Shown here one piece after another: positions 30,940 through 49,747 of a stretch of 64,000 nt of DNA. Below the pieces are notes generated by a model. It saw only the letters and a list, made by a program, of their open reading frames with translations, was not told the origin of the DNA and did not search any database. The stretch's first letter is position 1, and each line of letters starts with the position of its first letter. Origin of the DNA: Phaeosaccion multiseriatum. Taxonomy: Eukaryota; Protista; Ochrophyta, other classes. Made by a program: the position numbers and the translations under genes. The stretch lies in NCBI GenBank assembly GCA_965112735.1, contig CBCOSG010000001.1, forward strand, positions 1 through 64,000. Reading direction: 5' to 3'.

Positions 30940-30972
<33 letters not shown>

Positions 30973-32575: not shown

Positions 32576-32661
32576 AGGAAAAAAGAAGCAAACAGTAATT
32601 TATAGAACCTAGATTTGTTTCAGAGGAGCAAATACGGACTTCGTGATATTTAGGAAGAACC

Positions 32662-32814
32662 ATGCCACAATTTGATCAAATCACCTTTTTTACTCAAATT
32701 CTTAATTTGGGTTTGTGTTTTTTTGGATTTTATTTTTTCTTTGTTTTCTACTACCTGCCCAGTCTTAGTGCCTCTTTAAAATTACGCAAGATTTTTAAGG
32801 ATCTTCCCCGTTAA
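32662..32814 (+). CDS. atp8: ATP synthase subunit 8 (50 aa)
   Basis: MPQFDQITFFTQ, hydrophobic helix, LP...LKLR; below the ORF-track size cutoff. Confidence 0.95.
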   Translation: MPQFDQITFFTQILNLGLCFFGFYFFFVFYYLPSLSASLKLRKIFKDLPR

Positions 32815-32837
32815 GTATCTGATGTTCGAAGCCCAGT

Positions 32838-32911
32838 CGGGAAATGGCGCAGCTTGGTAGCGCATCTGTTTTGGGAACAGAAGGTCATGTGTTCAAATCA
32901 CATTTTCCCGA
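32838..32911 (+). tRNA. trnP: tRNA-Pro(UGG)
   Basis: Cloverleaf, anticodon TGG. Confidence 0.95.
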
Positions 32912-33010
32912 ATACTTAGGTATTTGCCTACGAACTTCAGGAGCCTAATAGAAAACCTCAAGGTATCTCTTGCATCACATATTTTGGTAATTTTAGTGAA
33001 TGCGATGGGA

Positions 33011-33081
33011 GACCGGATAGCATAAGGGCAATGCCTTGGATTGCAAATCCAATTATGGGAATTCGACTTTCCCTCCGGTCT
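33011..33081 (+). tRNA. trnC: tRNA-Cys(GCA)
   Basis: Cloverleaf, anticodon GCA. Confidence 0.92.
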
Positions 33082-33103
33082 AATACTTGTAAAAAAGTAG
33101 AAA

Positions 33104-33198
33104 CCAAGATCGTACTGATATTTGTATGAAATTATACCATAGGTATTTATAACCTAATATGGAAGCCATTCGTCTGAATCAGGTAGGGGTAAAAAACC
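33104..33198 (+). pseudogene. 5' fragment of nad9 with in-frame stop
   Basis: Homologous to 39248-39342; CAA changed to TAA. Confidence 0.85.
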
Positions 33199-33264
33199 TT
33201 GGGAAAGTAAGCAAAAAGAGAAAGAATACCTCCCAAGTCAAAATAGAGAAAATTTATACTTCCT

Positions 33265-34161
33265 ATGACCACTAAAAAAATATTTATCAACCATCAGCTT
33301 GTTTTTGTTGAAGAATTTTCCTCAGTATTACAAGCATGTAGTAGTTTAGGCATAGAACTTCCTCGATTTTGTTATCATCCCTTATTAAATATCGCGGGAA
33401 ATTGTCGTTCCTGTCTAGTAGAAGTTAGCCAAGGTCCAAAACCTCAGATGAGTTGTGCCTTCCCTATTTTAGGAGGCGGACGATTTTTTCTTCATAGTCC
33501 TTTGGTACGAAAAGCCCGAGAAACAGTTTTAGAGTTCAATCTAGTAAACCACCCTCTAGATTGCCCTATTTGTGACCAAGGAGGGGAATGCGATCTCCAA
33601 AATCAAAGCTTTCACTTCGGCAGTGACAAAACACGGTACGCTGAAGTAAAGCGTACGGTCAAAGAGACTTTTCTAGGTCTAGGTATAAAAAGTTTGATGA
33701 CTCGTTGCATACATTGCACTCGCTGTGTGCGGTATTCTAAGGAATGGTTGGGAGACAGTAATTTGACTGCCAATGGCAGAGGCTCTCACATGATAGTCGA
33801 AGCTTACTCCTCAACTCCCTTAACCACTTTAGCCTCAGGCAACGTAATAGATCTATGCCCCGTAGGGGCAGGTCTAAAAAAGGTGGTTAAAATTCTTGGG
33901 GAGAGTTGGGATTTTGTCGTCCGCTTGTGGCGAGACCTTCCTTTGGTATTGGCTTATCTTTCACTTATAATCTTATACACCTGCATTGGACTCCTCGGAG
34001 TCCGCCATATGTATGTGTATCTTGGCTGGGTCTATGCTACTTTTTTAGTAGTGTGGGGACTGTCACTTTACAAACTATGGCGGTGGGAGCCGTATAAAAT
34101 AATAGGACCATATTTGGTCCTTGTTTTGTACGTCACTTTTAAGATTTGGGTTTCCTCTTAG
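33265..34161 (+). CDS. nad11: NADH dehydrogenase subunit 11, N-terminal Fe-S half, fused to a ~96-aa unrelated hydrophobic tail
   Basis: PRFCYH, AGNCRSCLVE, HPLDCPICDQGGECDLQ, RCIHCTRCVR, DLCPVGA; homology stops after CPVGA. Confidence 0.95.
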   Translation: MTTKKIFINHQLVFVEEFSSVLQACSSLGIELPRFCYHPLLNIAGNCRSCLVEVSQGPKPQMSCAFPILGGGRFFLHSPLVRKARETVLEFNLVNHPLDCPICDQGGECDLQNQSFHFGSDKTRYAEVKRTVKETFLGLGIKSLMTRCIHCTRCVRYSKEWLGDSNLTANGRGSHMIVEAYSSTPLTTLASGNVIDLCPVGAGLKKVVKILGESWDFVVRLWRDLPLVLAYLSLIILYTCIGLLGVRHMYVYLGWVYATFLVVWGLSLYKLWRWEPYKIIGPYLVLVLYVTFKIWVSS

Positions 34162-34219
34162 GAGCTGACAAGATTTTTCTTCCATTTGTGAAGTTTGTGA
34201 CAAGCTTCAAGCAAAATAA

Positions 34220-35893
34220 AGAAAATCTTCACAAAGGGCATGGAGGGAATGCCTAGGGGCCCAGCCTCTGTAGACGTAGACAACAACGAAAGCTCGGAGG
34301 AAGGTCTTCGACCTGTGCACTTCGACCTTCTACCTTGGAAAACCATTCCGTTTGAGGAAAAACAGGCCAGTAAAGCCTGCAAAGAAGAGGGCAGACAAAC
34401 TGAAACATCTAAGTAATCTGCTTAAGAGAAATCAACCGAGATACCGTAAGTAGCGGTGAGCGAAAACGGTGTAGGCTCTCTCCTAGACGACCTTGAAAGA
34501 TCCAAATTAAAAAACGACTCCAGCTCAATAAAACATTGGATGGAGAAGAAAACCATAGAAGGTACAAGTCCCGTAGGGGAAGAAAAGGAGAGGATTCAAG
34601 TACTTTTCTGGCGATAGACAAGGAATATTGGGGAGCCATCCTCAAAGCCTAAATAGACTGGGCCACCCATAGTGAACAAGTATCGTGAGAGAAAGGTGAA
34701 ACAGAGATTTCTGCTGTGAAATGTCCTGAAACTCCCTGCCTTTTAGGTGTTGAAGCTTTGTGGAAGTGACAGCCTACCTTTTGTATAATGGGTCAGTGAG
34801 TAAAAGATTAGGGGCAAGCTTAAGTTTAGGAAGGCAAAGGTCAATCGAGGAGTAAAACTTCGTGGAGTCCCAATTTTTTTTACCCGAAACCGACTGAGCT
34901 AAGATTGAACAGGTTGAAAAAGACAAGGCAACTTTCTTTGGAGGACCGAACCCGTGTATGTGGCAAAATACTGGGATGATTTGATCTTAGGGGTGAAAGG
35001 CCAATCAAAGTCGGAGATAGCTGGTTTTCTGCGAAATCTATTGAAGTAGAGCGTCTTAATGGGAAATCCGGGGTAGAGCACTGTCGTAGGAAAGGGGAGG
35101 CAAAATCTTACTGACTTATGGCAAACTGCGAATACAGGATACGTCTTCAATCAAGGCAGACAGACCATGGGTGCGAAGGTCCTTGGTCAAAAGGGAAACA
35201 GCCCAGATTGATGGTTAAGGTCCCCAAAGGAAAGGAAGTGAAGAAGGAGGTGACGAGCTAAAGACAGCCAGGAGGTAGGCTTGGTAGCAGTCATCCTTTA
35301 AAGAATGCGTAACAGCTCACTGGTCGAAGTTTTTTGCGCCCACAATGTTTGGGACTAATCTTTCCTACCGAAGCCTCAAACCCTACAGGGTGGTAGCAGA
35401 ACCTTCCGTAGGTCGAGGAAGATGAGGGGCAACCTTCATTGGAGATATCGGAATCGAGAATACTGACATGAGTAGCAACAAACCAGGAGGATCCTGGTGG
35501 CCTTAAATTCAAGGGTTTCCACGACAGATTTCTTCTTCGTGGGGGCTTGAGCTAATCTCAAGCCATAAAGACGGTCCCTAAGACTGCTGACGAAAGCCAG
35601 GGTTGATGGGAGATCTTAGACAGGACGAAGCTGGCAGAGGAAGTAGAGGAGTATAGCTGGTCTCCTCTGCTTTAGCTCAGCTTCCAGGAAATACTTCTAG
35701 GAGCGGCACCGTATCGTAAACCGACACAGGTGAATGGGTGGAGTACACTCAGGCCTTTTGAGAGAACCGTGTTGAAGGAACTCGGCAAAATGACTCCGTG
35801 GCTTCGGTAGAAGGAGGAAGCCTTTGTAGGCTTGGCACTAAAGTGGGAGCGGCGACTGTTTAGTAAAAACACAGGACTCTGCGAAGTTGTAAA

Positions 35894-35931
<38 letters not shown>

Positions 35932-36017
35932 CGGAAGACCCGAAAGTGGAAGCTTTTAGGGAGAATGCCCAGTAAACGGCGGCTGTAACTCTGACGGTCC
36001 TAAGGTAGCAAAACTGA

Positions 36018-36048
<31 letters not shown>

Positions 36049-36124
36049 TGTAACGACTGCTCCGCTGTCTCCAACACGGACTCAGTGAAATTCCCATGGT
36101 CGTGAAGAGGCGACCTCGCTGCAG

Positions 36125-36158
<34 letters not shown>

Positions 36159-36463
36159 TTTGAGCTGGGAAGCATGACATAGGTTGCGTAGTAGTAGGTG
36201 GGAGGTTATGCCGCAGATGAAAGACCACCCTCCTTCAGTCTAGCTTTCTTCACCTGACTTGGGACAGGCTCAGACGGGTAGTTTGGCTGGGACGGCAGCC
36301 TCCTAAAGAGTAACGGGGGTACGCAAAGGTACACCCTTCCATGAAGGAAGAAAAGGCGGAATGGCTTGATGTGTGCCTGACTGTAAGACTCACAAGTCGA
36401 ACAGAGACGAAAGTCGGCCATACAGATCCGGTGGATGTGCATATGGGCACTTCACCGCTCATA

Positions 36464-36499
<36 letters not shown>

Positions 36500-36900
36500 T
36501 CTCGAGAGCTCCTATCGACGGAAGGGTTTGGCACCTCGATGTCGACTCATCACATCCTGGAGGAGAAAAAGCTTCCAAGGGTTGGGCTGTTCGCCCATGA
36601 AAGTGGTACGTGAGTTGGGTTTAGAACGTCGTGAGACAGTTTGGTCCCTATCTACTGTGGACAACAATCTAAGGGAAGAAATTCTAGTACGAGAGGACCG
36701 AATTTCGGGGATCCATGGTGTACCGGTTGTGTGAGCACATGCAGTGTCGGGTAGCTACATCTCTAGAAGAGAATGGCTGAAAGCATCTAAGCCAGAAACT
36801 TGTCCTCAAGCATTGTCTAGGCCTCGTTTTAGACGAAAACGTGAATAGGAGGGTAGTGAAAGTCGTGTAAGCGGTGTAGCTGATCCTTACTAATTAGGCT
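34220..36900 (+). rRNA. rnl: large subunit rRNA (ends approximate, no introns)
   Basis: GAAACATCTAAGTA, GACGGAAAGACCCCG, GGGATAACAGGCT, sarcin-ricin loop AGTACGAGAGGAC. Confidence 0.98.
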
Positions 36901-36901
36901 T

Positions 36902-37761
36902 ATGATGTTTAAATACATGCTGCGTCGTATGTGGAAACGAATAACAGATTTGGATACAGAGGTTTGGTTTGTAATACTGTTTGTAGCCTACTTTTTAACC
37001 TTTGTCATTTCCTCCCTTGGACTGTTTGAGGGTAGGTTTGATATCGTGTGTTCACTAGTGCAATTCAGCGTCCATCTGGGGTGGATTTTTTACTACCATA
37101 AAGAGGTAATTTTACCCAAGTTTAGAAAGGATAAAACCCGGTGTAGAGAGGGCAGTTATGTCGCATCTCTTTACCAGGATAGTCTGGGACACGAAGGTTT
37201 GGCAAAAGTACAAACTCTCTTGTATTCGTCATTTATCCTCGGAATCGGTCTACCACCAAAATACTCTATTTTGTTTTATCTCATAGGTTTACTCTCCTTA
37301 TTGGCCTGTCTCTATTTACTGCCGGCGTATGTGCGATCAACCACACGACTGTTTCAGGAGTGTTTTTTGAATCCTGGAGTACTCCACGCTAAAGGGTTTA
37401 CAAAAAAAAGAATAGTGTGGGAAGTGGCTGTAGAACACGGCAAAAGAATTCAAATAATTGTAGCGGGGGGCTAGTGGCAGATGTGTGGGTCGGAAAGTTC
37501 TTTTACGGTCTAGATGGAAGGTCGTCGCTGCAAAATTTCTATTCTTCGACGTTCGATAACTTCACTGCGGACACTCAAGAGAGTGTCACGAAATTCCGGG
37601 CCCTCGAAAGCAGGAGAGTCCCCTCAGACCTGATGAAGACGGCGTCGGGGAAACTGGATATAGGAGCAATAGATTGGCTTCTTCAAGAGTATAACGCGGC
37701 TCTTGATCATTACGGAGAACTATATAAGGCTCAACTTGAAGATCGAGTCGAAAAACCTTAA
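36902..37761 (+). CDS. orf286, paralog of orf280, split by a one-base frameshift in the G6 run (37465-37470)
   Basis: Adding one G yields KRIQIIVAGGLVADVWVGK, colinear with orf280 KRAGIFIIGGLLVDVGIGK. Confidence 0.78.
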
Positions 37762-37802
37762 TAGTGTAGAGATAGGTAAGTTGCTAAAGGGGTATAATAC
37801 CC

Positions 37803-37940
37803 CTAAGTAAATTATTTTGTCTTCTATGCTATTAAGCTATGGAATTATAAGTGAGTCTACTGCGCGAAGCTTAGGCAGTGGAGGTAGTTTGATTGGTAAA
37901 GTTTTTTAGACCTAGGACTCACATAGTCTTTTCATACCAT
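37803..37940 (+). repeat. dispersed duplicate of rps8 3' end
   Basis: GGAATTATAAGTGAGTCTACTGCGCGAAGCTTAGGCAGTGGAGGTAGTTTGATT is shared with rps8 and with about 32300-32352. Confidence 0.88.
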
Positions 37941-38014
37941 GGTGGAGTAGAGCAGTTGGCCAGCTTGTTAGGCTCATGATCTAAAAGTCGTAGGTTCGAA
38001 TCCTACCTCCGCCC
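37941..38014 (+). tRNA. trnM: initiator tRNA-fMet(CAU), intact copy
   Basis: Complete cloverleaf, anticodon CAT, initiator-type A11-U24 D-stem (GAGC/GCTT). Confidence 0.88.
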
Positions 38015-38201
38015 GTATGCATGAACGAATAAATCCCCAGTCTAACGAGGAAATCCTCGGTTTAAAGTCTTACATCTGCTACATTAGTCCCAGGTCCGGA
38101 TCTGGGCCATCTACCTATATTCCCATTATAGCCAATATTGGCCATATAGGCCGATACTAGCTAAAATAAAGAGGATAGATAAATGGGTTTCTCTTGCAAG
38201 C

Positions 38202-38342
38202 TTCCGCCGAAGATACCTCTTTCGAGGAAGGGGTTAGAAGGCGGAAAAGGGTGATGCCAACCCCCAAGGAAGCCGTGGCATTCAGTAAGCAACCTTGGCA
38301 TTTAAGCATCAGTCTGATCCATTGGTGCTTAGAAAGGTTCCT
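38202..38342 (+). ncRNA. structured element B (hairpin - GGTGATGCC-N14-CCGTGGCATT - hairpin)
   Basis: Scaffold identical to element A; hairpins TTCCGCC/GGCGGAA and AACCTT..TAAGCATCAGT/ATTGGTGCTTA..AAGGTT; RNA status is inferred. Confidence 0.5.
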
Positions 38343-38409
38343 GGATTTGTATGGATAGGCCGTCAGATTTCTGTCCCGGCGGTGGTAAGTTCAAATCTTA
38401 CCAAATCCA
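38343..38409 (+). ncRNA. tRNA-like (t-)element derived from trnR(ucg)
   Basis: Perfect acceptor stem GGATTTG/CAAATCC and T-arm GTAAG-TTCAAAT-CTTAC; D-arm and anticodon arm degenerate. Confidence 0.8.
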
Positions 38410-38410
38410 A

Positions 38411-38779
38411 ATTTGCGGCTTACATCAGCTTGTTCGTTATCCCCGTATACCTCAGTCCTCTCGTAGCAAATCTCCCGCTTTAAAGTCTTGCCCTCAAAAA
38501 AAGGGCCTTTGTTTAAAAATTTACTTACGAAAACCCAAAAAGCCTAACTCTGCCCTACGAAAGTTATGCCGAGTACGCCTAAGTACAGGCCGTCGAATCA
38601 GCGCCTACATTCCTGGCGAGGGCCACAACCTTCAGGAATTTAATTCTGTTTTGATTCGAGGAGGTCGAGCTAAAGATCTTCCTGGTGTCCGTTACCACGT
38701 CATTCGGGGCAAGTATGACTGTTTGGGTTTAATAAAGCGTACCACTTCTCGGTCCAAATATGGGGCCAGAAAACCATAA
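38411..38779 (+). CDS. rps12: ribosomal protein S12 (probable ATT start; upstream in-frame ATG at 38351 lies inside the t-element)
   Basis: [35 protein letters not shown]. Confidence 0.97.
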
Positions 38780-38782
38780 AAA

Positions 38783-39217
38783 ATGAGATTGAGCCAAAGT
38801 TCTGAAGGAAGTATTTTTTGTAAGCATCTCATTCGCCGCGGGGGTCGACTTCGAGCTCACAGCCTCGTAGGTAGCAGTCTGCGCTACCTCTACGAGCATC
38901 AACCGAAAAAGGCGGCTTATGTGTTTTTTCATGCTCTTCAACAGACTGAACCTATGGCTCAGGGAAAAACTTTTCCTGGCCGAAGAAAAAAGCAAGCCAA
39001 AGTACGATGGATTTCTTTCCCTCTCTGGAAAAAACGTCGTCAATACCTTAGTCTCCACTGGATTCTTCGTACGACTCCGAAGGGTCCACTATCTAAAAAT
39101 CTAGGTTCTTCCTTGTGTAAAGCCAGTCAGTCGACTGGCGAAGCCACTTTTCTAAAGCAGGCTTATCATCAACAAAGTTTAGAAGGTCGGCCTTATGCCA
39201 ACTATCGCTGGCACTAA
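38783..39217 (+). CDS. rps7: ribosomal protein S7 (divergent)
   Basis: Follows rps12; RRQYLSLHWI, C-terminal RPYANYRW. Confidence 0.88.
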   Translation: MRLSQSSEGSIFCKHLIRRGGRLRAHSLVGSSLRYLYEHQPKKAAYVFFHALQQTEPMAQGKTFPGRRKKQAKVRWISFPLWKKRRQYLSLHWILRTTPKGPLSKNLGSSLCKASQSTGEATFLKQAYHQQSLEGRPYANYRWH

Positions 39218-39269
39218 AAACTGAATCGGCTTTTGTGTATTAGAGGGCCAAGATCGTACTGATATTTGT

Positions 39270-39797
39270 ATGAAATTGTACCATAGGTATTTACAACCTA
39301 ATATGGAAATTATTCCTCTGAGCCAGGTGCGGGTAAAAAACCAGGAGGTGTGCGCTTATCTGCCTTTTCCTCCTCAGTGTTTTTCAACTTTGGTTTATCT
39401 AAAGTATCATACAAACACTGGGTATAAAATTTTATCTTGTATCTCCGGAGTGGATTACCCTTGCCGACAAAGTCGGTTGGAAGTGGTCTACGAAGTATTA
39501 AGTATCAAGTATAACCAACGCCTCCGTTTGCGAACTCTGTTTCAACCTAAAACCTTTAGATTTTTAGGTCTAGATTCAGTAACTAATATTTATATGGGCG
39601 CCAATTGGTGGGAAAGAGAAGTTTGGGATATGTTTGGTATCCTTTTTGAAAATCACCCCAGTTTACGGCGAATCTTAACGGATTACGGCTTTCAAGGCCA
39701 TCCTTTACGAAAAGATTTCCCATTGACAGGCTACGAAGAACTTAGGTACGACGATAGTGTGAAGAGAGTGGTAGGTAATCTTATCCAAAATTTATAG
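39270..39797 (+). CDS. nad9: NADH dehydrogenase subunit 9
   Basis: GVDYP, WEREVWDMFG, RRILTDYGFQGHPLRKDFPLTG. Confidence 0.98.
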   Translation: MKLYHRYLQPNMEIIPLSQVRVKNQEVCAYLPFPPQCFSTLVYLKYHTNTGYKILSCISGVDYPCRQSRLEVVYEVLSIKYNQRLRLRTLFQPKTFRFLGLDSVTNIYMGANWWEREVWDMFGILFENHPSLRRILTDYGFQGHPLRKDFPLTGYEELRYDDSVKRVVGNLIQNL

Positions 39798-39864
39798 AGG
39801 GAAAATATATTGGTTGTTGTGGACATTAGTGGGCCTGTATCATAAAGTTAAGCCAAACTTTGGT

Positions 39865-39935
39865 TGGAGTATAGCCAAGTGGAAAGGCAGCCGTTTTTGG
39901 CGCGGCCATCCAAGGTTCAAATCCTTGTACTCCAT
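39865..39935 (+). tRNA. trnQ: tRNA-Gln(UUG)
   Basis: Cloverleaf, anticodon TTG. Confidence 0.93.
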
Positions 39936-39950
39936 AAAAGAATGCACAAT

Positions 39951-40018
39951 TGAATACTATAGAGTCAATGCCTTGGATTGCAAATTCTATCAGGAGGATT
40001 TTATTTGGTTTCCAGCCT
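39951..40018 (+). pseudogene. degenerate tRNA-Cys
   Basis: CAATGCCTTGGATTGCAAAT is identical to trnC at 33029-33048; the rest cannot fold. Confidence 0.7.
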
Positions 40019-40033
40019 AGTTAGTAGATAAAT

Positions 40034-40105
40034 GCAGAAGTAACTCAAAGGTAGAGTGCAAGCTTGCCAAGTTTGAAGCTGAGGGTTCAAATCCCTTCTT
40101 TTGCT
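40034..40105 (+). tRNA. trnG: tRNA-Gly(GCC)
   Basis: Cloverleaf, anticodon GCC. Confidence 0.93.
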
Positions 40106-40178
40106 GGGTCCATAGCTCAGTTGGAAGAGCATTGGCCTTCTAAGCCAAACGTCATAGGTTCGAGTCCTATTGGACCCT
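40106..40178 (+). tRNA. trnR: tRNA-Arg(UCU)
   Basis: Cloverleaf, anticodon TCT. Confidence 0.94.
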
Positions 40179-40408
40179 GATCAGCCACTCCCGGAGGTTT
40201 GTCTTCATCATAGGCTGACAAGCCTTTTCTAAATAGGGAAAACTAACTCCAATAAAATTAGTTGGATTATTTTCCTCCTTGATCTCAGTATTTCTAATTA
40301 TCATTCTACTTATGTGTACAGGGGCTCAAATTTATATTCTTCTTATAGAGTTGAAGATTGAAGAGATATTTTTAGAAAGACCCAGCTGAATGTATTGTAT
40401 CAAATCTT

Positions 40409-40924
40409 ATGCGCAAAAGACGACTTTATATATCCGACAAAGTTTGTTGTGTTATTGAAAACCAAATTTTACGAATCGAAGGACCTTTGGGGGAAAAATC
40501 CTTAGTTCTTCCTCGTGGTTTAGGCCTCCGTTGGAGTCAAGGCCGTTTAGATTATCTACCAAATTGGCGACTGCGAAAACTAGAAGCTAGTTTCTACGAC
40601 GTTTTAAAAAAAACCATCCAAGGAGTGCATCAAGGTTTTGTCTTACATTTAGATATTTTAGGTGTGGGATATAAAGCGGAGGTCCAAGATAAGGATTTAC
40701 GCCTAAAATTGGGCAAAAGCAAAATAGATGTCATGGATTTAGGCTATGGTATTGATGTTAAATGCCTAAAACCTCGACATATGTTTTTGCAAGCCGCAGA
40801 AGGAAATTTTCTCCGTCAAACTGCTGCTAATATCCGTAGTCTTCACCCTCCGGAAGTTTATAAGCAAAAGGGCATTTTTTATCGAGGAGAAAAATCTGTG
40901 ACCAAACAAGGGAAAGTAAATTAA
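40409..40924 (+). CDS. rpl6: ribosomal protein L6
   Basis: IEGPLG, GVGYKA, PPEVYKQKGI. Confidence 0.95.
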   Translation: MRKRRLYISDKVCCVIENQILRIEGPLGEKSLVLPRGLGLRWSQGRLDYLPNWRLRKLEASFYDVLKKTIQGVHQGFVLHLDILGVGYKAEVQDKDLRLKLGKSKIDVMDLGYGIDVKCLKPRHMFLQAAEGNFLRQTAANIRSLHPPEVYKQKGIFYRGEKSVTKQGKVN

Positions 40925-40968
40925 AGAATTACGCCTCTACATATGCTAAAGAAAAAAGATAGGGGGTC

Positions 40969-41004
40969 TAGGCTCTAGTAGTAGTACCGTACTACTTAAT
41001 CCTT
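40969..41004. other. 36-bp spacer between the IR arms forming an imperfect hairpin (candidate telomere loop or concatemer junction)
   Basis: AGTAGTAC-C-GTACTACT at 40980-40996, plus AGG/CCT pairing with mismatches and bulges. Confidence 0.85.
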
Positions 41005-41048
41005 GACCCCCTATCTTTTTTCTTTAGCATATGTAGAGGCGTAATTCT

Positions 41049-41564
41049 TTAATTTACTTTCCCTTGTTTGGTCACAGATTTTTCTCCTCGATAAAAAATG
41101 CCCTTTTGCTTATAAACTTCCGGAGGGTGAAGACTACGGATATTAGCAGCAGTTTGACGGAGAAAATTTCCTTCTGCGGCTTGCAAAAACATATGTCGAG
41201 GTTTTAGGCATTTAACATCAATACCATAGCCTAAATCCATGACATCTATTTTGCTTTTGCCCAATTTTAGGCGTAAATCCTTATCTTGGACCTCCGCTTT
41301 ATATCCCACACCTAAAATATCTAAATGTAAGACAAAACCTTGATGCACTCCTTGGATGGTTTTTTTTAAAACGTCGTAGAAACTAGCTTCTAGTTTTCGC
41401 AGTCGCCAATTTGGTAGATAATCTAAACGGCCTTGACTCCAACGGAGGCCTAAACCACGAGGAAGAACTAAGGATTTTTCCCCCAAAGGTCCTTCGATTC
41501 GTAAAATTTGGTTTTCAATAACACAACAAACTTTGTCGGATATATAAAGTCGTCTTTTGCGCAT
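41049..41564 (-). CDS. rpl6: ribosomal protein L6 (IR copy)
   Basis: Mirror of 40409..40924. Confidence 0.95.
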   Translation of the reverse strand: MRKRRLYISDKVCCVIENQILRIEGPLGEKSLVLPRGLGLRWSQGRLDYLPNWRLRKLEASFYDVLKKTIQGVHQGFVLHLDILGVGYKAEVQDKDLRLKLGKSKIDVMDLGYGIDVKCLKPRHMFLQAAEGNFLRQTAANIRSLHPPEVYKQKGIFYRGEKSVTKQGKVN

Positions 41565-41794
41565 AAGATTTGATACAATACATTCAGCTGGGTCTTTCTA
41601 AAAATATCTCTTCAATCTTCAACTCTATAAGAAGAATATAAATTTGAGCCCCTGTACACATAAGTAGAATGATAATTAGAAATACTGAGATCAAGGAGGA
41701 AAATAATCCAACTAATTTTATTGGAGTTAGTTTTCCCTATTTAGAAAAGGCTTGTCAGCCTATGATGAAGACAAACCTCCGGGAGTGGCTGATC

Positions 41795-41867
41795 AGGGTC
41801 CAATAGGACTCGAACCTATGACGTTTGGCTTAGAAGGCCAATGCTCTTCCAACTGAGCTATGGACCC
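41795..41867 (-). tRNA. trnR: tRNA-Arg(UCU) (IR copy)
   Basis: Mirror of 40106..40178. Confidence 0.94.
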
Positions 41868-41939
41868 AGCAAAAGAAGGGATTTGAACCCTCAGCTTCAA
41901 ACTTGGCAAGCTTGCACTCTACCTTTGAGTTACTTCTGC
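41868..41939 (-). tRNA. trnG: tRNA-Gly(GCC) (IR copy)
   Basis: Mirror of 40034..40105. Confidence 0.93.
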
Positions 41940-42037
41940 ATTTATCTACTAACTAGGCTGGAAACCAAATAAAATCCTCCTGATAGAATTTGCAATCCAA
42001 GGCATTGACTCTATAGTATTCAATTGTGCATTCTTTT

Positions 42038-42108
42038 ATGGAGTACAAGGATTTGAACCTTGGATGGCCGCGCCAAAAACGGCTGCCTTTCCACTTGGCT
42101 ATACTCCA
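42038..42108 (-). tRNA. trnQ: tRNA-Gln(UUG) (IR copy)
   Basis: Mirror of 39865..39935. Confidence 0.93.
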
Positions 42109-42175
42109 ACCAAAGTTTGGCTTAACTTTATGATACAGGCCCACTAATGTCCACAACAACCAATATATTTTCCCT

Positions 42176-42703
42176 CTATAAATTTTGGATAAGATTACCT
42201 ACCACTCTCTTCACACTATCGTCGTACCTAAGTTCTTCGTAGCCTGTCAATGGGAAATCTTTTCGTAAAGGATGGCCTTGAAAGCCGTAATCCGTTAAGA
42301 TTCGCCGTAAACTGGGGTGATTTTCAAAAAGGATACCAAACATATCCCAAACTTCTCTTTCCCACCAATTGGCGCCCATATAAATATTAGTTACTGAATC
42401 TAGACCTAAAAATCTAAAGGTTTTAGGTTGAAACAGAGTTCGCAAACGGAGGCGTTGGTTATACTTGATACTTAATACTTCGTAGACCACTTCCAACCGA
42501 CTTTGTCGGCAAGGGTAATCCACTCCGGAGATACAAGATAAAATTTTATACCCAGTGTTTGTATGATACTTTAGATAAACCAAAGTTGAAAAACACTGAG
42601 GAGGAAAAGGCAGATAAGCGCACACCTCCTGGTTTTTTACCCGCACCTGGCTCAGAGGAATAATTTCCATATTAGGTTGTAAATACCTATGGTACAATTT
42701 CAT
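42176..42703 (-). CDS. nad9: NADH dehydrogenase subunit 9 (IR copy)
   Basis: Mirror of 39270..39797. Confidence 0.98.
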   Translation of the reverse strand: MKLYHRYLQPNMEIIPLSQVRVKNQEVCAYLPFPPQCFSTLVYLKYHTNTGYKILSCISGVDYPCRQSRLEVVYEVLSIKYNQRLRLRTLFQPKTFRFLGLDSVTNIYMGANWWEREVWDMFGILFENHPSLRRILTDYGFQGHPLRKDFPLTGYEELRYDDSVKRVVGNLIQNL

Positions 42704-42755
42704 ACAAATATCAGTACGATCTTGGCCCTCTAATACACAAAAGCCGATTCAGTTT

Positions 42756-43190
42756 TTAGTGCCAGCGATAGTTGGCATAAGGCCGACCTTCTAAACTTTG
42801 TTGATGATAAGCCTGCTTTAGAAAAGTGGCTTCGCCAGTCGACTGACTGGCTTTACACAAGGAAGAACCTAGATTTTTAGATAGTGGACCCTTCGGAGTC
42901 GTACGAAGAATCCAGTGGAGACTAAGGTATTGACGACGTTTTTTCCAGAGAGGGAAAGAAATCCATCGTACTTTGGCTTGCTTTTTTCTTCGGCCAGGAA
43001 AAGTTTTTCCCTGAGCCATAGGTTCAGTCTGTTGAAGAGCATGAAAAAACACATAAGCCGCCTTTTTCGGTTGATGCTCGTAGAGGTAGCGCAGACTGCT
43101 ACCTACGAGGCTGTGAGCTCGAAGTCGACCCCCGCGGCGAATGAGATGCTTACAAAAAATACTTCCTTCAGAACTTTGGCTCAATCTCAT
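42756..43190 (-). CDS. rps7: ribosomal protein S7 (IR copy)
   Basis: Mirror of 38783..39217. Confidence 0.88.
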   Translation of the reverse strand: MRLSQSSEGSIFCKHLIRRGGRLRAHSLVGSSLRYLYEHQPKKAAYVFFHALQQTEPMAQGKTFPGRRKKQAKVRWISFPLWKKRRQYLSLHWILRTTPKGPLSKNLGSSLCKASQSTGEATFLKQAYHQQSLEGRPYANYRWH

Positions 43191-43193
43191 TTT

Positions 43194-43562
43194 TTATGGT
43201 TTTCTGGCCCCATATTTGGACCGAGAAGTGGTACGCTTTATTAAACCCAAACAGTCATACTTGCCCCGAATGACGTGGTAACGGACACCAGGAAGATCTT
43301 TAGCTCGACCTCCTCGAATCAAAACAGAATTAAATTCCTGAAGGTTGTGGCCCTCGCCAGGAATGTAGGCGCTGATTCGACGGCCTGTACTTAGGCGTAC
43401 TCGGCATAACTTTCGTAGGGCAGAGTTAGGCTTTTTGGGTTTTCGTAAGTAAATTTTTAAACAAAGGCCCTTTTTTTGAGGGCAAGACTTTAAAGCGGGA
43501 GATTTGCTACGAGAGGACTGAGGTATACGGGGATAACGAACAAGCTGATGTAAGCCGCAAAT
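43194..43562 (-). CDS. rps12: ribosomal protein S12 (IR copy)
   Basis: Mirror of 38411..38779. Confidence 0.97.
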
Positions 43563-43563
43563 T

Positions 43564-43630
43564 TGGATTTGGTAAGATTTGAACTTACCACCGCCGGGAC
43601 AGAAATCTGACGGCCTATCCATACAAATCC
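43564..43630 (-). ncRNA. tRNA-like element (IR copy)
   Basis: Mirror of 38343..38409. Confidence 0.8.
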
Positions 43631-43771
43631 AGGAACCTTTCTAAGCACCAATGGATCAGACTGATGCTTAAATGCCAAGGTTGCTTACTGAATGCCACGG
43701 CTTCCTTGGGGGTTGGCATCACCCTTTTCCGCCTTCTAACCCCTTCCTCGAAAGAGGTATCTTCGGCGGAA
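43631..43771 (-). ncRNA. structured element B (IR copy)
   Basis: Mirror of 38202..38342. Confidence 0.5.
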
Positions 43772-43958
43772 GCTTGCAAGAGAAACCCATTTATCTATCC
43801 TCTTTATTTTAGCTAGTATCGGCCTATATGGCCAATATTGGCTATAATGGGAATATAGGTAGATGGCCCAGATCCGGACCTGGGACTAATGTAGCAGATG
43901 TAAGACTTTAAACCGAGGATTTCCTCGTTAGACTGGGGATTTATTCGTTCATGCATAC

Positions 43959-44032
43959 GGGCGGAGGTAGGATTCGAACCTACGACTTTTAGATCATGAG
44001 CCTAACAAGCTGGCCAACTGCTCTACTCCACC
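43959..44032 (-). tRNA. trnM: tRNA-fMet(CAU) (IR copy)
   Basis: Mirror of 37941..38014. Confidence 0.88.
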
Positions 44033-44211
44033 ATGGTATGAAAAGACTATGTGAGTCCTAGGTCTAAAAAACTTTACCAATCAAACTACCTCCACTGCCT
44101 AAGCTTCGCGCAGTAGACTCACTTATAATTCCATAGCTTAATAGCATAGAAGACAAAATAATTTACTTAGGGGTATTATACCCCTTTAGCAACTTACCTA
44201 TCTCTACACTA

Positions 44212-45071
44212 TTAAGGTTTTTCGACTCGATCTTCAAGTTGAGCCTTATATAGTTCTCCGTAATGATCAAGAGCCGCGTTATACTCTTGAAGAAGCCAAT
44301 CTATTGCTCCTATATCCAGTTTCCCCGACGCCGTCTTCATCAGGTCTGAGGGGACTCTCCTGCTTTCGAGGGCCCGGAATTTCGTGACACTCTCTTGAGT
44401 GTCCGCAGTGAAGTTATCGAACGTCGAAGAATAGAAATTTTGCAGCGACGACCTTCCATCTAGACCGTAAAAGAACTTTCCGACCCACACATCTGCCACT
44501 AGCCCCCCGCTACAATTATTTGAATTCTTTTGCCGTGTTCTACAGCCACTTCCCACACTATTCTTTTTTTTGTAAACCCTTTAGCGTGGAGTACTCCAGG
44601 ATTCAAAAAACACTCCTGAAACAGTCGTGTGGTTGATCGCACATACGCCGGCAGTAAATAGAGACAGGCCAATAAGGAGAGTAAACCTATGAGATAAAAC
44701 AAAATAGAGTATTTTGGTGGTAGACCGATTCCGAGGATAAATGACGAATACAAGAGAGTTTGTACTTTTGCCAAACCTTCGTGTCCCAGACTATCCTGGT
44801 AAAGAGATGCGACATAACTGCCCTCTCTACACCGGGTTTTATCCTTTCTAAACTTGGGTAAAATTACCTCTTTATGGTAGTAAAAAATCCACCCCAGATG
44901 GACGCTGAATTGCACTAGTGAACACACGATATCAAACCTACCCTCAAACAGTCCAAGGGAGGAAATGACAAAGGTTAAAAAGTAGGCTACAAACAGTATT
45001 ACAAACCAAACCTCTGTATCCAAATCTGTTATTCGTTTCCACATACGACGCAGCATGTATTTAAACATCAT
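44212..45071 (-). CDS. orf286 (IR copy, same frameshift)
   Basis: Mirror of 36902..37761. Confidence 0.78.
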
Positions 45072-45072
45072 A

Positions 45073-45473
45073 AGCCTAATTAGTAAGGATCAGCTACACC
45101 GCTTACACGACTTTCACTACCCTCCTATTCACGTTTTCGTCTAAAACGAGGCCTAGACAATGCTTGAGGACAAGTTTCTGGCTTAGATGCTTTCAGCCAT
45201 TCTCTTCTAGAGATGTAGCTACCCGACACTGCATGTGCTCACACAACCGGTACACCATGGATCCCCGAAATTCGGTCCTCTCGTACTAGAATTTCTTCCC
45301 TTAGATTGTTGTCCACAGTAGATAGGGACCAAACTGTCTCACGACGTTCTAAACCCAACTCACGTACCACTTTCATGGGCGAACAGCCCAACCCTTGGAA
45401 GCTTTTTCTCCTCCAGGATGTGATGAGTCGACATCGAGGTGCCAAACCCTTCCGTCGATAGGAGCTCTCGAGA

Positions 45474-45509
<36 letters not shown>

Positions 45510-45814
45510 TATGAGCGGTGAAGTGCCCATATGCACATCCACCGGATCTGTATGGCCGACTTTCGTCTCTGTTCGACTTGTGAGTCTTACAGTCAGGCAC
45601 ACATCAAGCCATTCCGCCTTTTCTTCCTTCATGGAAGGGTGTACCTTTGCGTACCCCCGTTACTCTTTAGGAGGCTGCCGTCCCAGCCAAACTACCCGTC
45701 TGAGCCTGTCCCAAGTCAGGTGAAGAAAGCTAGACTGAAGGAGGGTGGTCTTTCATCTGCGGCATAACCTCCCACCTACTACTACGCAACCTATGTCATG
45801 CTTCCCAGCTCAAA

Positions 45815-45848
<34 letters not shown>

Positions 45849-45924
45849 CTGCAGCGAGGTCGCCTCTTCACGACCATGGGAATTTCACTGAGTCCGTGTT
45901 GGAGACAGCGGAGCAGTCGTTACA

Positions 45925-45955
<31 letters not shown>

Positions 45956-46041
45956 TCAGTTTTGCTACCTTAGGACCGTCAGAGTTACAGCCGCCGTTTA
46001 CTGGGCATTCTCCCTAAAAGCTTCCACTTTCGGGTCTTCCG

Positions 46042-46079
<38 letters not shown>

Positions 46080-47753
46080 TTTACAACTTCGCAGAGTCCT
46101 GTGTTTTTACTAAACAGTCGCCGCTCCCACTTTAGTGCCAAGCCTACAAAGGCTTCCTCCTTCTACCGAAGCCACGGAGTCATTTTGCCGAGTTCCTTCA
46201 ACACGGTTCTCTCAAAAGGCCTGAGTGTACTCCACCCATTCACCTGTGTCGGTTTACGATACGGTGCCGCTCCTAGAAGTATTTCCTGGAAGCTGAGCTA
46301 AAGCAGAGGAGACCAGCTATACTCCTCTACTTCCTCTGCCAGCTTCGTCCTGTCTAAGATCTCCCATCAACCCTGGCTTTCGTCAGCAGTCTTAGGGACC
46401 GTCTTTATGGCTTGAGATTAGCTCAAGCCCCCACGAAGAAGAAATCTGTCGTGGAAACCCTTGAATTTAAGGCCACCAGGATCCTCCTGGTTTGTTGCTA
46501 CTCATGTCAGTATTCTCGATTCCGATATCTCCAATGAAGGTTGCCCCTCATCTTCCTCGACCTACGGAAGGTTCTGCTACCACCCTGTAGGGTTTGAGGC
46601 TTCGGTAGGAAAGATTAGTCCCAAACATTGTGGGCGCAAAAAACTTCGACCAGTGAGCTGTTACGCATTCTTTAAAGGATGACTGCTACCAAGCCTACCT
46701 CCTGGCTGTCTTTAGCTCGTCACCTCCTTCTTCACTTCCTTTCCTTTGGGGACCTTAACCATCAATCTGGGCTGTTTCCCTTTTGACCAAGGACCTTCGC
46801 ACCCATGGTCTGTCTGCCTTGATTGAAGACGTATCCTGTATTCGCAGTTTGCCATAAGTCAGTAAGATTTTGCCTCCCCTTTCCTACGACAGTGCTCTAC
46901 CCCGGATTTCCCATTAAGACGCTCTACTTCAATAGATTTCGCAGAAAACCAGCTATCTCCGACTTTGATTGGCCTTTCACCCCTAAGATCAAATCATCCC
47001 AGTATTTTGCCACATACACGGGTTCGGTCCTCCAAAGAAAGTTGCCTTGTCTTTTTCAACCTGTTCAATCTTAGCTCAGTCGGTTTCGGGTAAAAAAAAT
47101 TGGGACTCCACGAAGTTTTACTCCTCGATTGACCTTTGCCTTCCTAAACTTAAGCTTGCCCCTAATCTTTTACTCACTGACCCATTATACAAAAGGTAGG
47201 CTGTCACTTCCACAAAGCTTCAACACCTAAAAGGCAGGGAGTTTCAGGACATTTCACAGCAGAAATCTCTGTTTCACCTTTCTCTCACGATACTTGTTCA
47301 CTATGGGTGGCCCAGTCTATTTAGGCTTTGAGGATGGCTCCCCAATATTCCTTGTCTATCGCCAGAAAAGTACTTGAATCCTCTCCTTTTCTTCCCCTAC
47401 GGGACTTGTACCTTCTATGGTTTTCTTCTCCATCCAATGTTTTATTGAGCTGGAGTCGTTTTTTAATTTGGATCTTTCAAGGTCGTCTAGGAGAGAGCCT
47501 ACACCGTTTTCGCTCACCGCTACTTACGGTATCTCGGTTGATTTCTCTTAAGCAGATTACTTAGATGTTTCAGTTTGTCTGCCCTCTTCTTTGCAGGCTT
47601 TACTGGCCTGTTTTTCCTCAAACGGAATGGTTTTCCAAGGTAGAAGGTCGAAGTGCACAGGTCGAAGACCTTCCTCCGAGCTTTCGTTGTTGTCTACGTC
47701 TACAGAGGCTGGGCCCCTAGGCATTCCCTCCATGCCCTTTGTGAAGATTTTCT
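45073..47753 (-). rRNA. rnl: large subunit rRNA (IR copy)
   Basis: Mirror of 34220..36900. Confidence 0.98.
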
Positions 47754-47811
47754 TTATTTTGCTTGAAGCTTGTCACAAACTTCACAAATGGAAGAAAAAT
47801 CTTGTCAGCTC

Positions 47812-48708
47812 CTAAGAGGAAACCCAAATCTTAAAAGTGACGTACAAAACAAGGACCAAATATGGTCCTATTATTTTATACGGCTCCCACCGCCATAGTT
47901 TGTAAAGTGACAGTCCCCACACTACTAAAAAAGTAGCATAGACCCAGCCAAGATACACATACATATGGCGGACTCCGAGGAGTCCAATGCAGGTGTATAA
48001 GATTATAAGTGAAAGATAAGCCAATACCAAAGGAAGGTCTCGCCACAAGCGGACGACAAAATCCCAACTCTCCCCAAGAATTTTAACCACCTTTTTTAGA
48101 CCTGCCCCTACGGGGCATAGATCTATTACGTTGCCTGAGGCTAAAGTGGTTAAGGGAGTTGAGGAGTAAGCTTCGACTATCATGTGAGAGCCTCTGCCAT
48201 TGGCAGTCAAATTACTGTCTCCCAACCATTCCTTAGAATACCGCACACAGCGAGTGCAATGTATGCAACGAGTCATCAAACTTTTTATACCTAGACCTAG
48301 AAAAGTCTCTTTGACCGTACGCTTTACTTCAGCGTACCGTGTTTTGTCACTGCCGAAGTGAAAGCTTTGATTTTGGAGATCGCATTCCCCTCCTTGGTCA
48401 CAAATAGGGCAATCTAGAGGGTGGTTTACTAGATTGAACTCTAAAACTGTTTCTCGGGCTTTTCGTACCAAAGGACTATGAAGAAAAAATCGTCCGCCTC
48501 CTAAAATAGGGAAGGCACAACTCATCTGAGGTTTTGGACCTTGGCTAACTTCTACTAGACAGGAACGACAATTTCCCGCGATATTTAATAAGGGATGATA
48601 ACAAAATCGAGGAAGTTCTATGCCTAAACTACTACATGCTTGTAATACTGAGGAAAATTCTTCAACAAAAACAAGCTGATGGTTGATAAATATTTTTTTA
48701 GTGGTCAT
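47812..48708 (-). CDS. nad11: nad11 N-terminal half with hydrophobic tail (IR copy)
   Basis: Mirror of 33265..34161. Confidence 0.95.
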   Translation of the reverse strand: MTTKKIFINHQLVFVEEFSSVLQACSSLGIELPRFCYHPLLNIAGNCRSCLVEVSQGPKPQMSCAFPILGGGRFFLHSPLVRKARETVLEFNLVNHPLDCPICDQGGECDLQNQSFHFGSDKTRYAEVKRTVKETFLGLGIKSLMTRCIHCTRCVRYSKEWLGDSNLTANGRGSHMIVEAYSSTPLTTLASGNVIDLCPVGAGLKKVVKILGESWDFVVRLWRDLPLVLAYLSLIILYTCIGLLGVRHMYVYLGWVYATFLVVWGLSLYKLWRWEPYKIIGPYLVLVLYVTFKIWVSS

Positions 48709-48891
48709 AGGAAGTATAAATTTTCTCTATTTTGACTTGGGAGGTATTCTTTCTCTTTTTGCTTACTTTCCCAAGGTTTTTTACCCCTACCTGATTCAGA
48801 CGAATGGCTTCCATATTAGGTTATAAATACCTATGGTATAATTTCATACAAATATCAGTACGATCTTGGTTTCTACTTTTTTACAAGTATT

Positions 48892-48962
48892 AGACCGGAG
48901 GGAAAGTCGAATTCCCATAATTGGATTTGCAATCCAAGGCATTGCCCTTATGCTATCCGGTC
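48892..48962 (-). tRNA. trnC: tRNA-Cys(GCA) (IR copy)
   Basis: Mirror of 33011..33081. Confidence 0.92.
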
Positions 48963-49061
48963 TCCCATCGCATTCACTAAAATTACCAAAATATGTGATG
49001 CAAGAGATACCTTGAGGTTTTCTATTAGGCTCCTGAAGTTCGTAGGCAAATACCTAAGTAT

Positions 49062-49135
49062 TCGGGAAAATGTGATTTGAACACATGACCTTCTGTTCCC
49101 AAAACAGATGCGCTACCAAGCTGCGCCATTTCCCG
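49062..49135 (-). tRNA. trnP: tRNA-Pro(UGG) (IR copy)
   Basis: Mirror of 32838..32911. Confidence 0.95.
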
Positions 49136-49158
49136 ACTGGGCTTCGAACATCAGATAC

Positions 49159-49311
49159 TTAACGGGGAAGATCCTTAAAAATCTTGCGTAATTTTAAAGA
49201 GGCACTAAGACTGGGCAGGTAGTAGAAAACAAAGAAAAAATAAAATCCAAAAAAACACAAACCCAAATTAAGAATTTGAGTAAAAAAGGTGATTTGATCA
49301 AATTGTGGCAT
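49159..49311 (-). CDS. atp8: ATP synthase subunit 8 (IR copy)
   Basis: Mirror of 32662..32814. Confidence 0.95.
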   Translation of the reverse strand: MPQFDQITFFTQILNLGLCFFGFYFFFVFYYLPSLSASLKLRKIFKDLPR

Positions 49312-49747
49312 GGTTCTTCCTAAATATCACGAAGTCCGTATTTGCTCCTCTGAAACAAATCTAGGTTCTATAAATTACTGTTTGCTTCTTTTTTCCTTAT
49401 TTTTTCCCTCACAAGAGAAGTGGAGTGGGGTGTAGCTAATTTAATATATATTTTTTGGTCTTCATCTTAAATCCCAGAAAGTCAGGAAACAGGATATTGC
49501 GGGCAAAGGTAGAACTTATACCTACGACTTTTAGATCATGAGCCTAACAAGCTGGCCAAGTGCTTTAGTCCACCAGTATATGAAAAAACTACGTGAATCT
49601 TAGATTTAAAAAACTTCACAAATCAAACTACCTCCACTGCCTAAGCTTCGCGCAGTAGACTCACTTATAATTCTATAGCTTAATAGCGTAGAACACAAGA
49701 TAATTTACTTAGGATTATTCTACTTTTCTAGTATTGTAATCTACCCA

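What the first reader, a model, noticed from the sequence alone, without database searches (positions are those of the whole stretch)
40940..41033. A 31-kb palindrome closed by a 36-nt imperfect hairpin: probable covalently closed telomere
Seen: two 15,492-bp arms meet across 36 nt that still fold back. There is an 8-bp stem AGTAGTAC/GTACTACT around a single C, then bulged and mismatched bases (T.T at 40969/41004, AGG/CCT paired). All IR genes are transcribed toward this point. Established: incompletely paired terminal hairpins existing as flip and flop isomers are the telomeres of poxviruses, and hairpin-ended linear mtDNAs are known from some yeasts and oomycetes. Inference: the genome is a linear molecule with 15.5-kb terminal repeats and hairpin ends, or a circle that extrudes and resolves a cruciform here. 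A simple fold-back read artefact would not normally leave a defined asymmetric loop. No resolvase, protelomerase or DNA polymerase gene is recognisable, so the machinery would be nuclear or among the unknown ORFs.
Basis: partly seen in the sequence, partly recalled or inferred. Interest (0 to 1): 0.75.

Follow-up and report, generated by a model that had tools for sequence, protein, structure and literature searches.

The report
Giant palindrome in algal mitochondrial genome
The fold-back is real: it is the centre of two identical 15.5-kb inverted repeats that nearly touch in a 56-kb algal mitochondrial genome, assembled four times over in every possible orientation, and nothing yet shows that this centre is ever a closed hairpin chromosome end.

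Summary
Two 15,492-bp arms (25477-40968 and 41005-56496) are 100% complementary and 36 nt apart.

The DNA is a roughly 56.06-kb mitochondrial genome of a photosynthetic stramenopile. The arms are a gene-bearing inverted repeat whose small single-copy region has shrunk to 35-38 nt.

The contig (C17, 224,089 bp) is an exactly closed circular tetramer of this genome.
- The single-copy region runs +,+,-,+ and the spacer runs forward, forward, flipped, flipped.
- All four possible junction types therefore occur once each.
- The arms end at the same bases in all four units, although each unit carries its own indel errors. A random fold-back artefact is unlikely.

The fine structure that suggested a telomere is weak. 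The spacer reads differently in the units (36, 35, 35 and 38 nt). The 8-bp stem is found intact only in unit 1. No version folds better than shuffled sequence.

Two head-to-tail junctions do not fit a purely hairpin-ended linear genome. No telomere-resolvase family was found.

The best reading is a recombining, circular-mapping genome with flip-flop isomers. Partial resolution into hairpin-capped linear molecules, as in Candida viswanathii, remains possible but untested. The scan reached the same view at unit 2 (s1-354593).

The parts
1..436 (-). Outer 436 nt of the right-hand repeat arm of the fourth unit. The contig is circularly permuted and starts inside the repeat.
   Evidence: window 1-436 is the reverse complement of 25477-25912. 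The contig ends at repeat position 437 and begins at position 436, so the closure is exact.
437..25476 (.). Single-copy region of 25,040 bp. It carries nad, cox, atp6, cob, rps and rpl genes and 17 tRNA genes.
   Evidence: It is present four times in C17, in orientations +,+,-,+.
24400..25572 (+). cob gene. Its last 96 nt lie inside the repeat, so a cob 3' fragment is duplicated at the other repeat boundary.
   Evidence: This is a boundary signature of a real, expanded inverted repeat.
25477..40968 (+). Left repeat arm of 15,492 bp. Gene order: orf176, rpl14, orf148, trnR, trnY, permuted 5S, rns, orf280, trnP, trnC, nad11 (Fe-S half), rnl, orf190/114, trnM, rps12, rps7, nad9, trnQ, trnG, trnR, rpl6. 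All are on the + strand.
40409..40924 (+). rpl6, the last gene before the centre. Its twin at 41049-41564 (-) converges on it.
   Evidence: PF00347, E = 2e-08. The 124-nt gap between the two copies folds at -56.1 kcal/mol as one strand.
40969..41004 (.). Central spacer of 36 nt in unit 1, read as the vestigial small single-copy region. It contains the 8-bp stem 40980-40987/40989-40996.
   Evidence: The equivalent spacers are C17:96936-96970 (35 nt), 152808-152842 (35 nt, the exact reverse complement of the former) and 208759-208796 (38 nt, in an error-rich patch). Its folding is not above chance.
41005..56496 (-). Right repeat arm, the exact reverse complement of the left arm.
56497..64000 (.). 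Start of the second genome unit (single-copy region again, same orientation).

Best explanation
The site is the centre of a large, gene-bearing inverted repeat in a circular-mapping mitochondrial genome of about 56 kb. It is probably multimeric or concatemeric in vivo.

The repeat has grown until the small single-copy region is only about 35 nt. The two arms therefore form a 31-kb near-perfect palindrome.

Homologous recombination and gene conversion between the arms keep them identical. They also invert whatever lies between two arms. This produces flip and flop orientations of both the spacer and the 25-kb single-copy region and, in multimers, head-to-head as well as head-to-tail junctions.

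The short asymmetric spacer is simply what remains unpaired at the centre. It also marks where the two convergent rpl6 transcription units meet.

Shown: the palindrome, its reproducible boundaries, the tetramer with all four junction types, and the mitochondrial gene content. Inferred: the recombination mechanism, the in-vivo topology, and any role in transcript ends.
For: - The gene content is mitochondrial and stramenopile-like: rns, rnl, permuted mitochondrial 5S, 25 distinct tRNA genes, split nad11, and nad/cox/atp/rps/rpl genes.
- C17 is 224,089 bp. It begins at repeat position 436 and ends at position 437, so it is an exactly closed tetramer.
- The single-copy orientation is +,+,-,+. The spacer orientation is forward, forward, flipped, flipped. 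This gives the junction types R-F-L, R-F-R, L-F-L and L-F-R once each.
- The repeat/single-copy boundaries are exact in every unit, and cob is cut by the boundary.
- Differences between units are almost only unshared indels in patches, with 6 substitutions in about 108 kb. The units were therefore built from different reads, yet the arms end at identical bases.
- Unit 1 also carries a 114-nt segment that the others lack. This shows that the units are not copies of one consensus.
- Precedents exist. Circular-mapping mitochondrial genomes with gene-bearing repeats and stoichiometric flip-flop isomers are known in Candida (PMC3105423) and ancyromonads (PMC12086354).
Against: - No reads were available. 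The order and orientation of the units could be the assembler's walk through an unresolved repeat rather than real molecules.
- Reads that turn around a hairpin end look the same as reads across a duplex palindrome.
- Half of the tetramer (units 2-3: R-F-R then L-F-L) is exactly what a covalently closed linear duplex would give.
- Repeat coverage (expected 2x) could not be checked.
- No relative was found, so conservation of the layout could not be tested.
Confidence: 0.6

Rival explanations
1. Hairpin telomere. A large or dominant share of the mitochondrial DNA is a linear 56-kb duplex: single-copy core, 15.5-kb terminal inverted repeats, and ends covalently closed by the roughly 35-nt loop. 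The duplex palindrome would then be the replicated telomere junction, resolved by a nuclear-encoded enzyme. This is how poxviruses, Pichia/Williopsis and, in part, Candida viswanathii work.
For: - The architecture matches the linear genomes of Proteromonas lacertae (15.6-kb terminal repeats, genes transcribed outward, ends undetermined; PMC2997541) and Palpitomonas bilix (hairpins suggested but not shown; PMC5174734).
- In C. viswanathii a repeat palindrome in a circular-mapping genome is partly resolved into hairpin-ended linear molecules (PMC3105423).
- Head-to-head junctions R-F-R and L-F-L are present in the contig.
- Both loop orientations exist.
- The spacer varies between units far more than the arms do. 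That is expected if the centre is repeatedly cut and rejoined.
Against: - The contig also holds two head-to-tail junctions and closes as a circle.
- No ResT/TelK, Ydc2/Cce1, Pox_A22 or RuvC match was found in the 67-Mb assembly. These are six-frame searches and weak negatives.
- None of the unknown mitochondrial ORFs matches a resolvase or polymerase.
- The loop has no structure above chance.
- There is no physical evidence of ends.
Confidence: 0.3
2. Assembly artefact. The real genome has one copy of the 15.5-kb region, or a longer small single-copy region. In this reading the palindrome was made by fold-back or chimeric long reads or by an untrimmed adapter.
For: - The contig is a noisy long-read multimer with unpolished patches.
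- The spacer sequence is not reproducible between units.
- Only unit 1 has perfectly identical arms.
Against: - The same arm ends occur in four units that carry independent error patterns.
- The repeat/single-copy boundaries are exact, and a cob fragment is duplicated at the boundary.
- Both single-copy ends attach to the repeat, which a single-copy region could not do without a second inverted copy.
- Random fold-backs give variable junctions.
- From memory only, the spacer does not look like the common sequencing adapters. This was not tested.
Confidence: 0.07

Closest known systems
Candida viswanathii mitochondrial genome (Valach et al. 2011, PMC3105423)
   Same: It is circular-mapping, and its large inverted repeats lie head to head as one large palindrome. 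Genome isomers exist. The palindrome is proposed as a resolution element.
   Different: The yeast has 4,162-bp arms and a 798-bp non-coding spacer. Here the arms are 15,492 bp, carry both rRNA genes and many protein genes, and are only 35-38 nt apart. In the yeast, half-size BAL-31-sensitive terminal fragments were shown. Nothing physical is known here.
Linear mitochondrial genomes with large gene-bearing terminal inverted repeats: Proteromonas lacertae (PMC2997541), Palpitomonas bilix (PMC5174734), Acavomonas peruviana
   Same: They have a single-copy core flanked by repeats of 15-30 kb that carry many genes. In Proteromonas, also a stramenopile with 15.6-kb repeats, the genes are transcribed outward from the middle.
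   Different: Those genomes were shown to be linear by PFGE or end-tailing, and their end structures are unknown or carry tandem repeats. Here long-read assembly runs straight through the place where such ends would be and closes a circle.
Circular-mapping organelle genomes with a quadripartite inverted-repeat layout and flip-flop isomers (plastids; Candida maltosa/sojae/neerlandica, PMC3105423; ancyromonads, PMC12086354)
   Same: There are two identical inverted copies carrying rRNA and other genes. Both relative orientations of the single-copy regions are present. A gene is truncated at the repeat boundary.
   Different: The small single-copy region is reduced to about 35 nt with no gene, so the repeat pair is a true palindrome. 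I found no such case described for a photosynthetic stramenopile mitochondrion in the papers I searched.
Hairpin telomeres of poxviruses, of Pichia pijperi/Williopsis mrakii mtDNA, and the Paramecium mtDNA cross-link; isopod linear monomers plus circular head-to-head dimers (PMC4502366)
   Same: All have an inverted duplication meeting at a short, incompletely paired centre. Head-to-head junctions occur as duplex forms.
   Different: Those systems have demonstrated covalently closed ends or monomer/dimer species. Their concatemers are head-to-head only. Here head-to-tail junctions are also assembled, and no ends are shown.

Membership tests
Organelle genome with large inverted repeat and flip-flop isomers | Two long, identical copies in inverted orientation that carry genes | tested here: met
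   The arms are 15,492 bp and 100% complementary. They carry rns, rnl, 5S, 9 tRNA genes and at least 7 identified protein genes.
Organelle genome with large inverted repeat and flip-flop isomers | Copies separated by two single-copy regions | tested here: met
   The large single-copy region is 25,040 bp. The small one is vestigial at 35-38 nt.
Organelle genome with large inverted repeat and flip-flop isomers | Both relative orientations of the single-copy regions coexist | tested here: met
   Within contig C17 the single-copy region runs +,+,-,+ and the spacer runs forward, forward, flipped, flipped. This is shown in the assembly, not in reads.
Organelle genome with large inverted repeat and flip-flop isomers | Repeat at twice the read depth of the single-copy regions | not testable with these tools
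   No reads or coverage data are available.
Covalently closed hairpin telomere of a linear genome | Physical molecule ends at the centre of the inverted duplication | not testable with these tools
   This needs read-end pile-ups, PFGE or Southern blots.
Covalently closed hairpin telomere of a linear genome | Strands joined at the end (snap-back, exonuclease resistance, symmetric fold-back reads) | not testable with these tools
   No reads and no DNA are available.
Covalently closed hairpin telomere of a linear genome | Duplex junctions only head-to-head or tail-to-tail | tested here: not met
   Units 1 and 4 are head-to-tail junctions, with different single-copy ends on the two sides. The caveat is that this could be the assembler's path.
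Covalently closed hairpin telomere of a linear genome | Defined, incompletely paired loop present as flip and flop | tested here: inconclusive
   Both orientations exist, but the loop sequence differs between units and folds no better than shuffles.
Covalently closed hairpin telomere of a linear genome | A telomere or junction resolvase is encoded | tested here: inconclusive
   PF16684, PF09159, PF04848 and PF02075 gave no match in G000. For two of them the controls rang nowhere. Introns and unknown enzymes are not excluded.
Fold-back or chimeric-read assembly artefact | Variable junction position, and no independent support for a second copy | tested here: not met
   The arm ends are identical in four units with independent errors. 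Both single-copy ends join the repeat at exact boundaries.

The most novel reading that the evidence does not exclude
The roughly 35-nt centre is the loop of a covalently closed hairpin telomere. A sizeable share of this alga's mitochondrial DNA would then be a 56-kb linear duplex with 15.5-kb terminal inverted repeats, and long reads simply turned the corner. That would give the first sequence of the missing end structure of the 'large terminal inverted repeat' class of linear mitochondrial genomes (Proteromonas, Palpitomonas). It would also imply an unidentified nuclear-encoded resolving activity in a photosynthetic stramenopile.
Probability: 0.25. Interest if true: 0.7.

Novelty: new member of a known kind. 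Interest (0 to 1): 0.45.

Why it matters
Gene-bearing inverted repeats are scattered across mitochondrial genomes. How circular-mapping and linear forms convert into each other is only partly understood.

This genome is an extreme case. Its repeat pair is a 31-kb palindrome that makes up 55% of the genome, in a lineage where I found no such layout described.

The question can be tested from existing raw reads. One would classify reads that cross the centre as symmetric fold-backs or as reads joining different flanks.

The result also carries a practical warning. Long-read assemblers can emit organelle multimers whose units differ in orientation and polishing state, so fine structure read from a single unit can mislead.

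Tried and rejected
- **Relatives.** A nad9-based scan of metagenome contigs gave only distant mitochondria (at most 59% identity; one 61-residue fragment at 82%). None reached a comparable centre and none carried inverted repeats.
- **Exact-sequence scans.** An exact 24-mer next to the centre is absent from genome contigs and viral contigs.
- **Mosaic spacer.** I tested whether unit 1's spacer is a mosaic of the flip and flop forms seen in units 2 and 3. The support is weak: 6 segments against a null mean of 8.8, fraction about 0.05. I did not adopt it.
- **Which spacer version is true.** This is unresolved. Unit 1 lies in the only error-free unit, while units 2 and 3 agree exactly as reverse complements. 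Because the arms are identical, systematic read errors would also mirror exactly.
- **Adapter remnant.** I considered this only from memory and did not test it.
- **Repeated element.** The arm-end motif is not a repeated element in the genome.
- **Terminator and promoter scans.** The scan at the centre found no terminator-like site and one promoter-like match, fewer than the 4.0 expected from shuffles.
- **Organism name.** The tools did not give one. Eustigmatophytes are excluded by gene orientation (PMC13060386). Plocamiomonas and CCMP2098 are excluded by genetic code, introns and size (PMC13582874).
- **Large protein searches.** I did not use them, because no claim here rests on them.

Full report
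**What the DNA is.** The window is a mitochondrial genome.
- It carries bacterial-type rns and rnl and a match to the permuted mitochondrial 5S rRNA family.
- It has 25 distinct tRNA genes, including trnW(CCA).
- It has a standard protist set of protein genes. These are nad1, nad3, nad5, nad6, nad7, nad9, the Fe-S half of nad11 and two further antiporter-type nad subunits, cox1-3, cob, atp6, and many rps and rpl genes.
- The host assembly G000 has 67 Mb in 22 contigs and also has plastid contigs with rbcL. The organism is therefore a photosynthetic stramenopile.

**The observation.** Window 25477-40968 and 41005-56496 are exact reverse complements of 15,492 bp, with 36 nt between them. Every rRNA, tRNA and identified protein gene in the left arm is on the + strand. 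The last one, rpl6, stops 44 nt before the spacer. The outer boundary of the repeat cuts cob 96 nt before its stop codon. A truncated gene at the boundary is typical of a real, expanded organelle inverted repeat.

**The larger context.** The window is the first 64 kb of contig C17, which is 224,089 bp long. I fetched the whole contig and aligned the parts of the unit to it.
- C17 is four units of single-copy region (25,040 bp), arm, spacer and arm.
- It begins at repeat position 436 and ends at position 437, so the assembler closed it as a circle and cut it at an arbitrary place.
- The single-copy region lies in orientations +,+,-,+.
- The spacer lies forward, forward, flipped, flipped.

Call the two ends of the single-copy region L and R. 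The four junctions are then R-spacer-L, R-spacer-R, L-spacer-L and L-spacer-R, which is every possible duplex junction exactly once. This is the result expected for a multimeric population in which recombination between inverted arms flips each intervening segment independently. Two of the four junctions are head-to-tail. Hairpin-capped monomers and their head-to-head concatemers cannot produce those.

**Is it an artefact?** I compared the eight arms base by base.
- Unit 1 is error-free.
- The other units differ from it by 5 to 264 alignment columns, almost all indels.
- The differences are clustered in patches and are almost never shared between arms or units.
- There are only 6 substitutions in about 108 kb.

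The units were therefore built from different reads and polished unevenly. Even so, the arms end at the same nucleotides in all four, and the repeat/single-copy boundaries are exact. Unit 1 also contains a 114-nt segment at about 7556-7669 that units 2-4 lack, so the units are not copies of one consensus. A random fold-back chimera would not give the same junction four times. I put the artefact reading at about 7%.

**How far the 'imperfect hairpin' can be trusted.** The spacer is 36 nt in unit 1 (window:40969-41004). It is 35 nt in unit 2 (L013:2936-2970) and 35 nt in unit 3 (L018:8808-8842), and unit 3 is the exact reverse complement of unit 2. It is 38 nt in unit 4 (L024:4759-4796), which lies in an error-rich patch.
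- Units 1 and 2 both sit in clean surroundings, yet they differ at about seven positions. That is far more than the error rate of the arms predicts.
- The centre is therefore either truly heteroplasmic or systematically mis-called.
- Because the arms are identical, reads over a flipped spacer are the same strings as reads over an unflipped one. The agreement of units 2 and 3 therefore does not prove that their version is the true one.
- The 8-bp stem around a single C is intact only in unit 1.
- None of the four versions folds better than shuffled sequence: z is -0.96, -1.09, -0.54 and -1.79.
- The 124-nt gap between the two rpl6 copies folds at -56 kcal/mol, but only because of the arms.

The robust feature is a short, asymmetric, essentially unstructured spacer at the tip of a 15.5-kb stem.

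**Search for machinery.** Six-frame searches of G000 found no match to four families: ResT/TelK protelomerase (PF16684), Ydc2/Cce1 (PF09159), poxvirus A22 resolvase (PF04848) and RuvC (PF02075). For two of these the control genomes did not ring either, and introns can hide genes, so the negatives are weak. The unknown mitochondrial ORFs are all under 300 aa and match no resolvase or polymerase in Pfam or PHROGs.

**Relatives.** A metagenome scan with nad9 returned only distant mitochondria, with no comparable centre and no inverted repeats. Conservation of the layout could therefore not be tested.

**What is known.**
- Valach et al. (PMC3105423) describe Candida mitochondrial genomes with large inverted repeats and stoichiometric flip-flop isomers.
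- In the same paper, C. viswanathii has 4,162-bp repeats separated by 798 bp that form a large palindrome. This palindrome is partly resolved into linear molecules with presumed hairpin ends.
- They link this to Pichia/Williopsis, Paramecium and the isopod Armadillidium. Isopods have linear monomers plus circular dimers (PMC4502366).
- Proteromonas lacertae, a stramenopile, has a linear genome with 15.6-kb gene-rich terminal repeats and undetermined ends (PMC2997541).
- Palpitomonas bilix is similar, and hairpins were suggested for it but not shown (PMC5174734).
- Ancyromonads have circular-mapping genomes with gene-bearing repeats (PMC12086354).

The present genome therefore belongs to a known kind. 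It stands out for the near-total loss of the small single-copy region, for the size of the palindrome (55% of the unit), and for its host lineage.

**Verdict.**
- Most likely (about 0.6), this is the vestigial small single-copy region of a recombining, circular-mapping or concatemeric mitochondrial genome.
- A hairpin-telomere form, dominant or partial, remains a live alternative (about 0.3). Half of the tetramer is exactly what such molecules would give, and reads that turn around a hairpin cannot be told from reads across a duplex palindrome unless they reach different flanks.
- The decisive test is a classification of the existing long reads.

An earlier agent of this scan examined the same structure at unit 2 (s1-354593) and reached a similar view. 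I re-derived the tetramer and the palindrome independently. I added the junction-type analysis, the non-reproducibility of the spacer and the folding controls.

Noticed in passing
window 7556-7669: Unit 1 has a 114-nt segment between rps8 and nad6 that units 2-4 of the same contig lack. It looks like an imperfect local duplication. It is either length heteroplasmy or a second haplotype.
   Followed up: partly
window 9461-11550 (- strand): nad5 is split into two ORFs, 10399-11550 and 9461-10357, with three consecutive stop codons between them in that frame. This could be a frameshift, a sequencing error or a real split.
   Followed up: no
G000 contigs C18 (108,425 bp) and C21 (30,185 bp): rbcL occurs with identical score on two contigs. 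C21 may be a second plastid isomer or a redundant fragment. C19, C20 and C22 (69, 56 and 27 kb) were not identified. None of them matched the mitochondrial cox1, repeat-boundary or palindrome-centre probes.
   Followed up: no
C17 units 3 and 4 (C17:149000-152800 and 208800-216000): There are patches with dense indel errors: 97 and 264 differing columns per arm against 0 in unit 1. Polishing of the multimer is uneven, so fine-scale features should be read only from unit 1 or from reads.
   Followed up: yes
window 31929-32473 and 37465-38015 (and mirror copies): There are internal direct repeats of 79-88% identity inside each arm, about 5.5 kb apart, one behind each rRNA gene. A related segment at 6778-7104 has 71-90% identity to copies in the opposite arm.
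   Followed up: no
G000:C3:1316632-1316674: A 43-nt stretch with 95% identity to mitochondrial cox1 lies on a nuclear contig. It may be a tiny nuclear insert of mitochondrial DNA.
   Followed up: no
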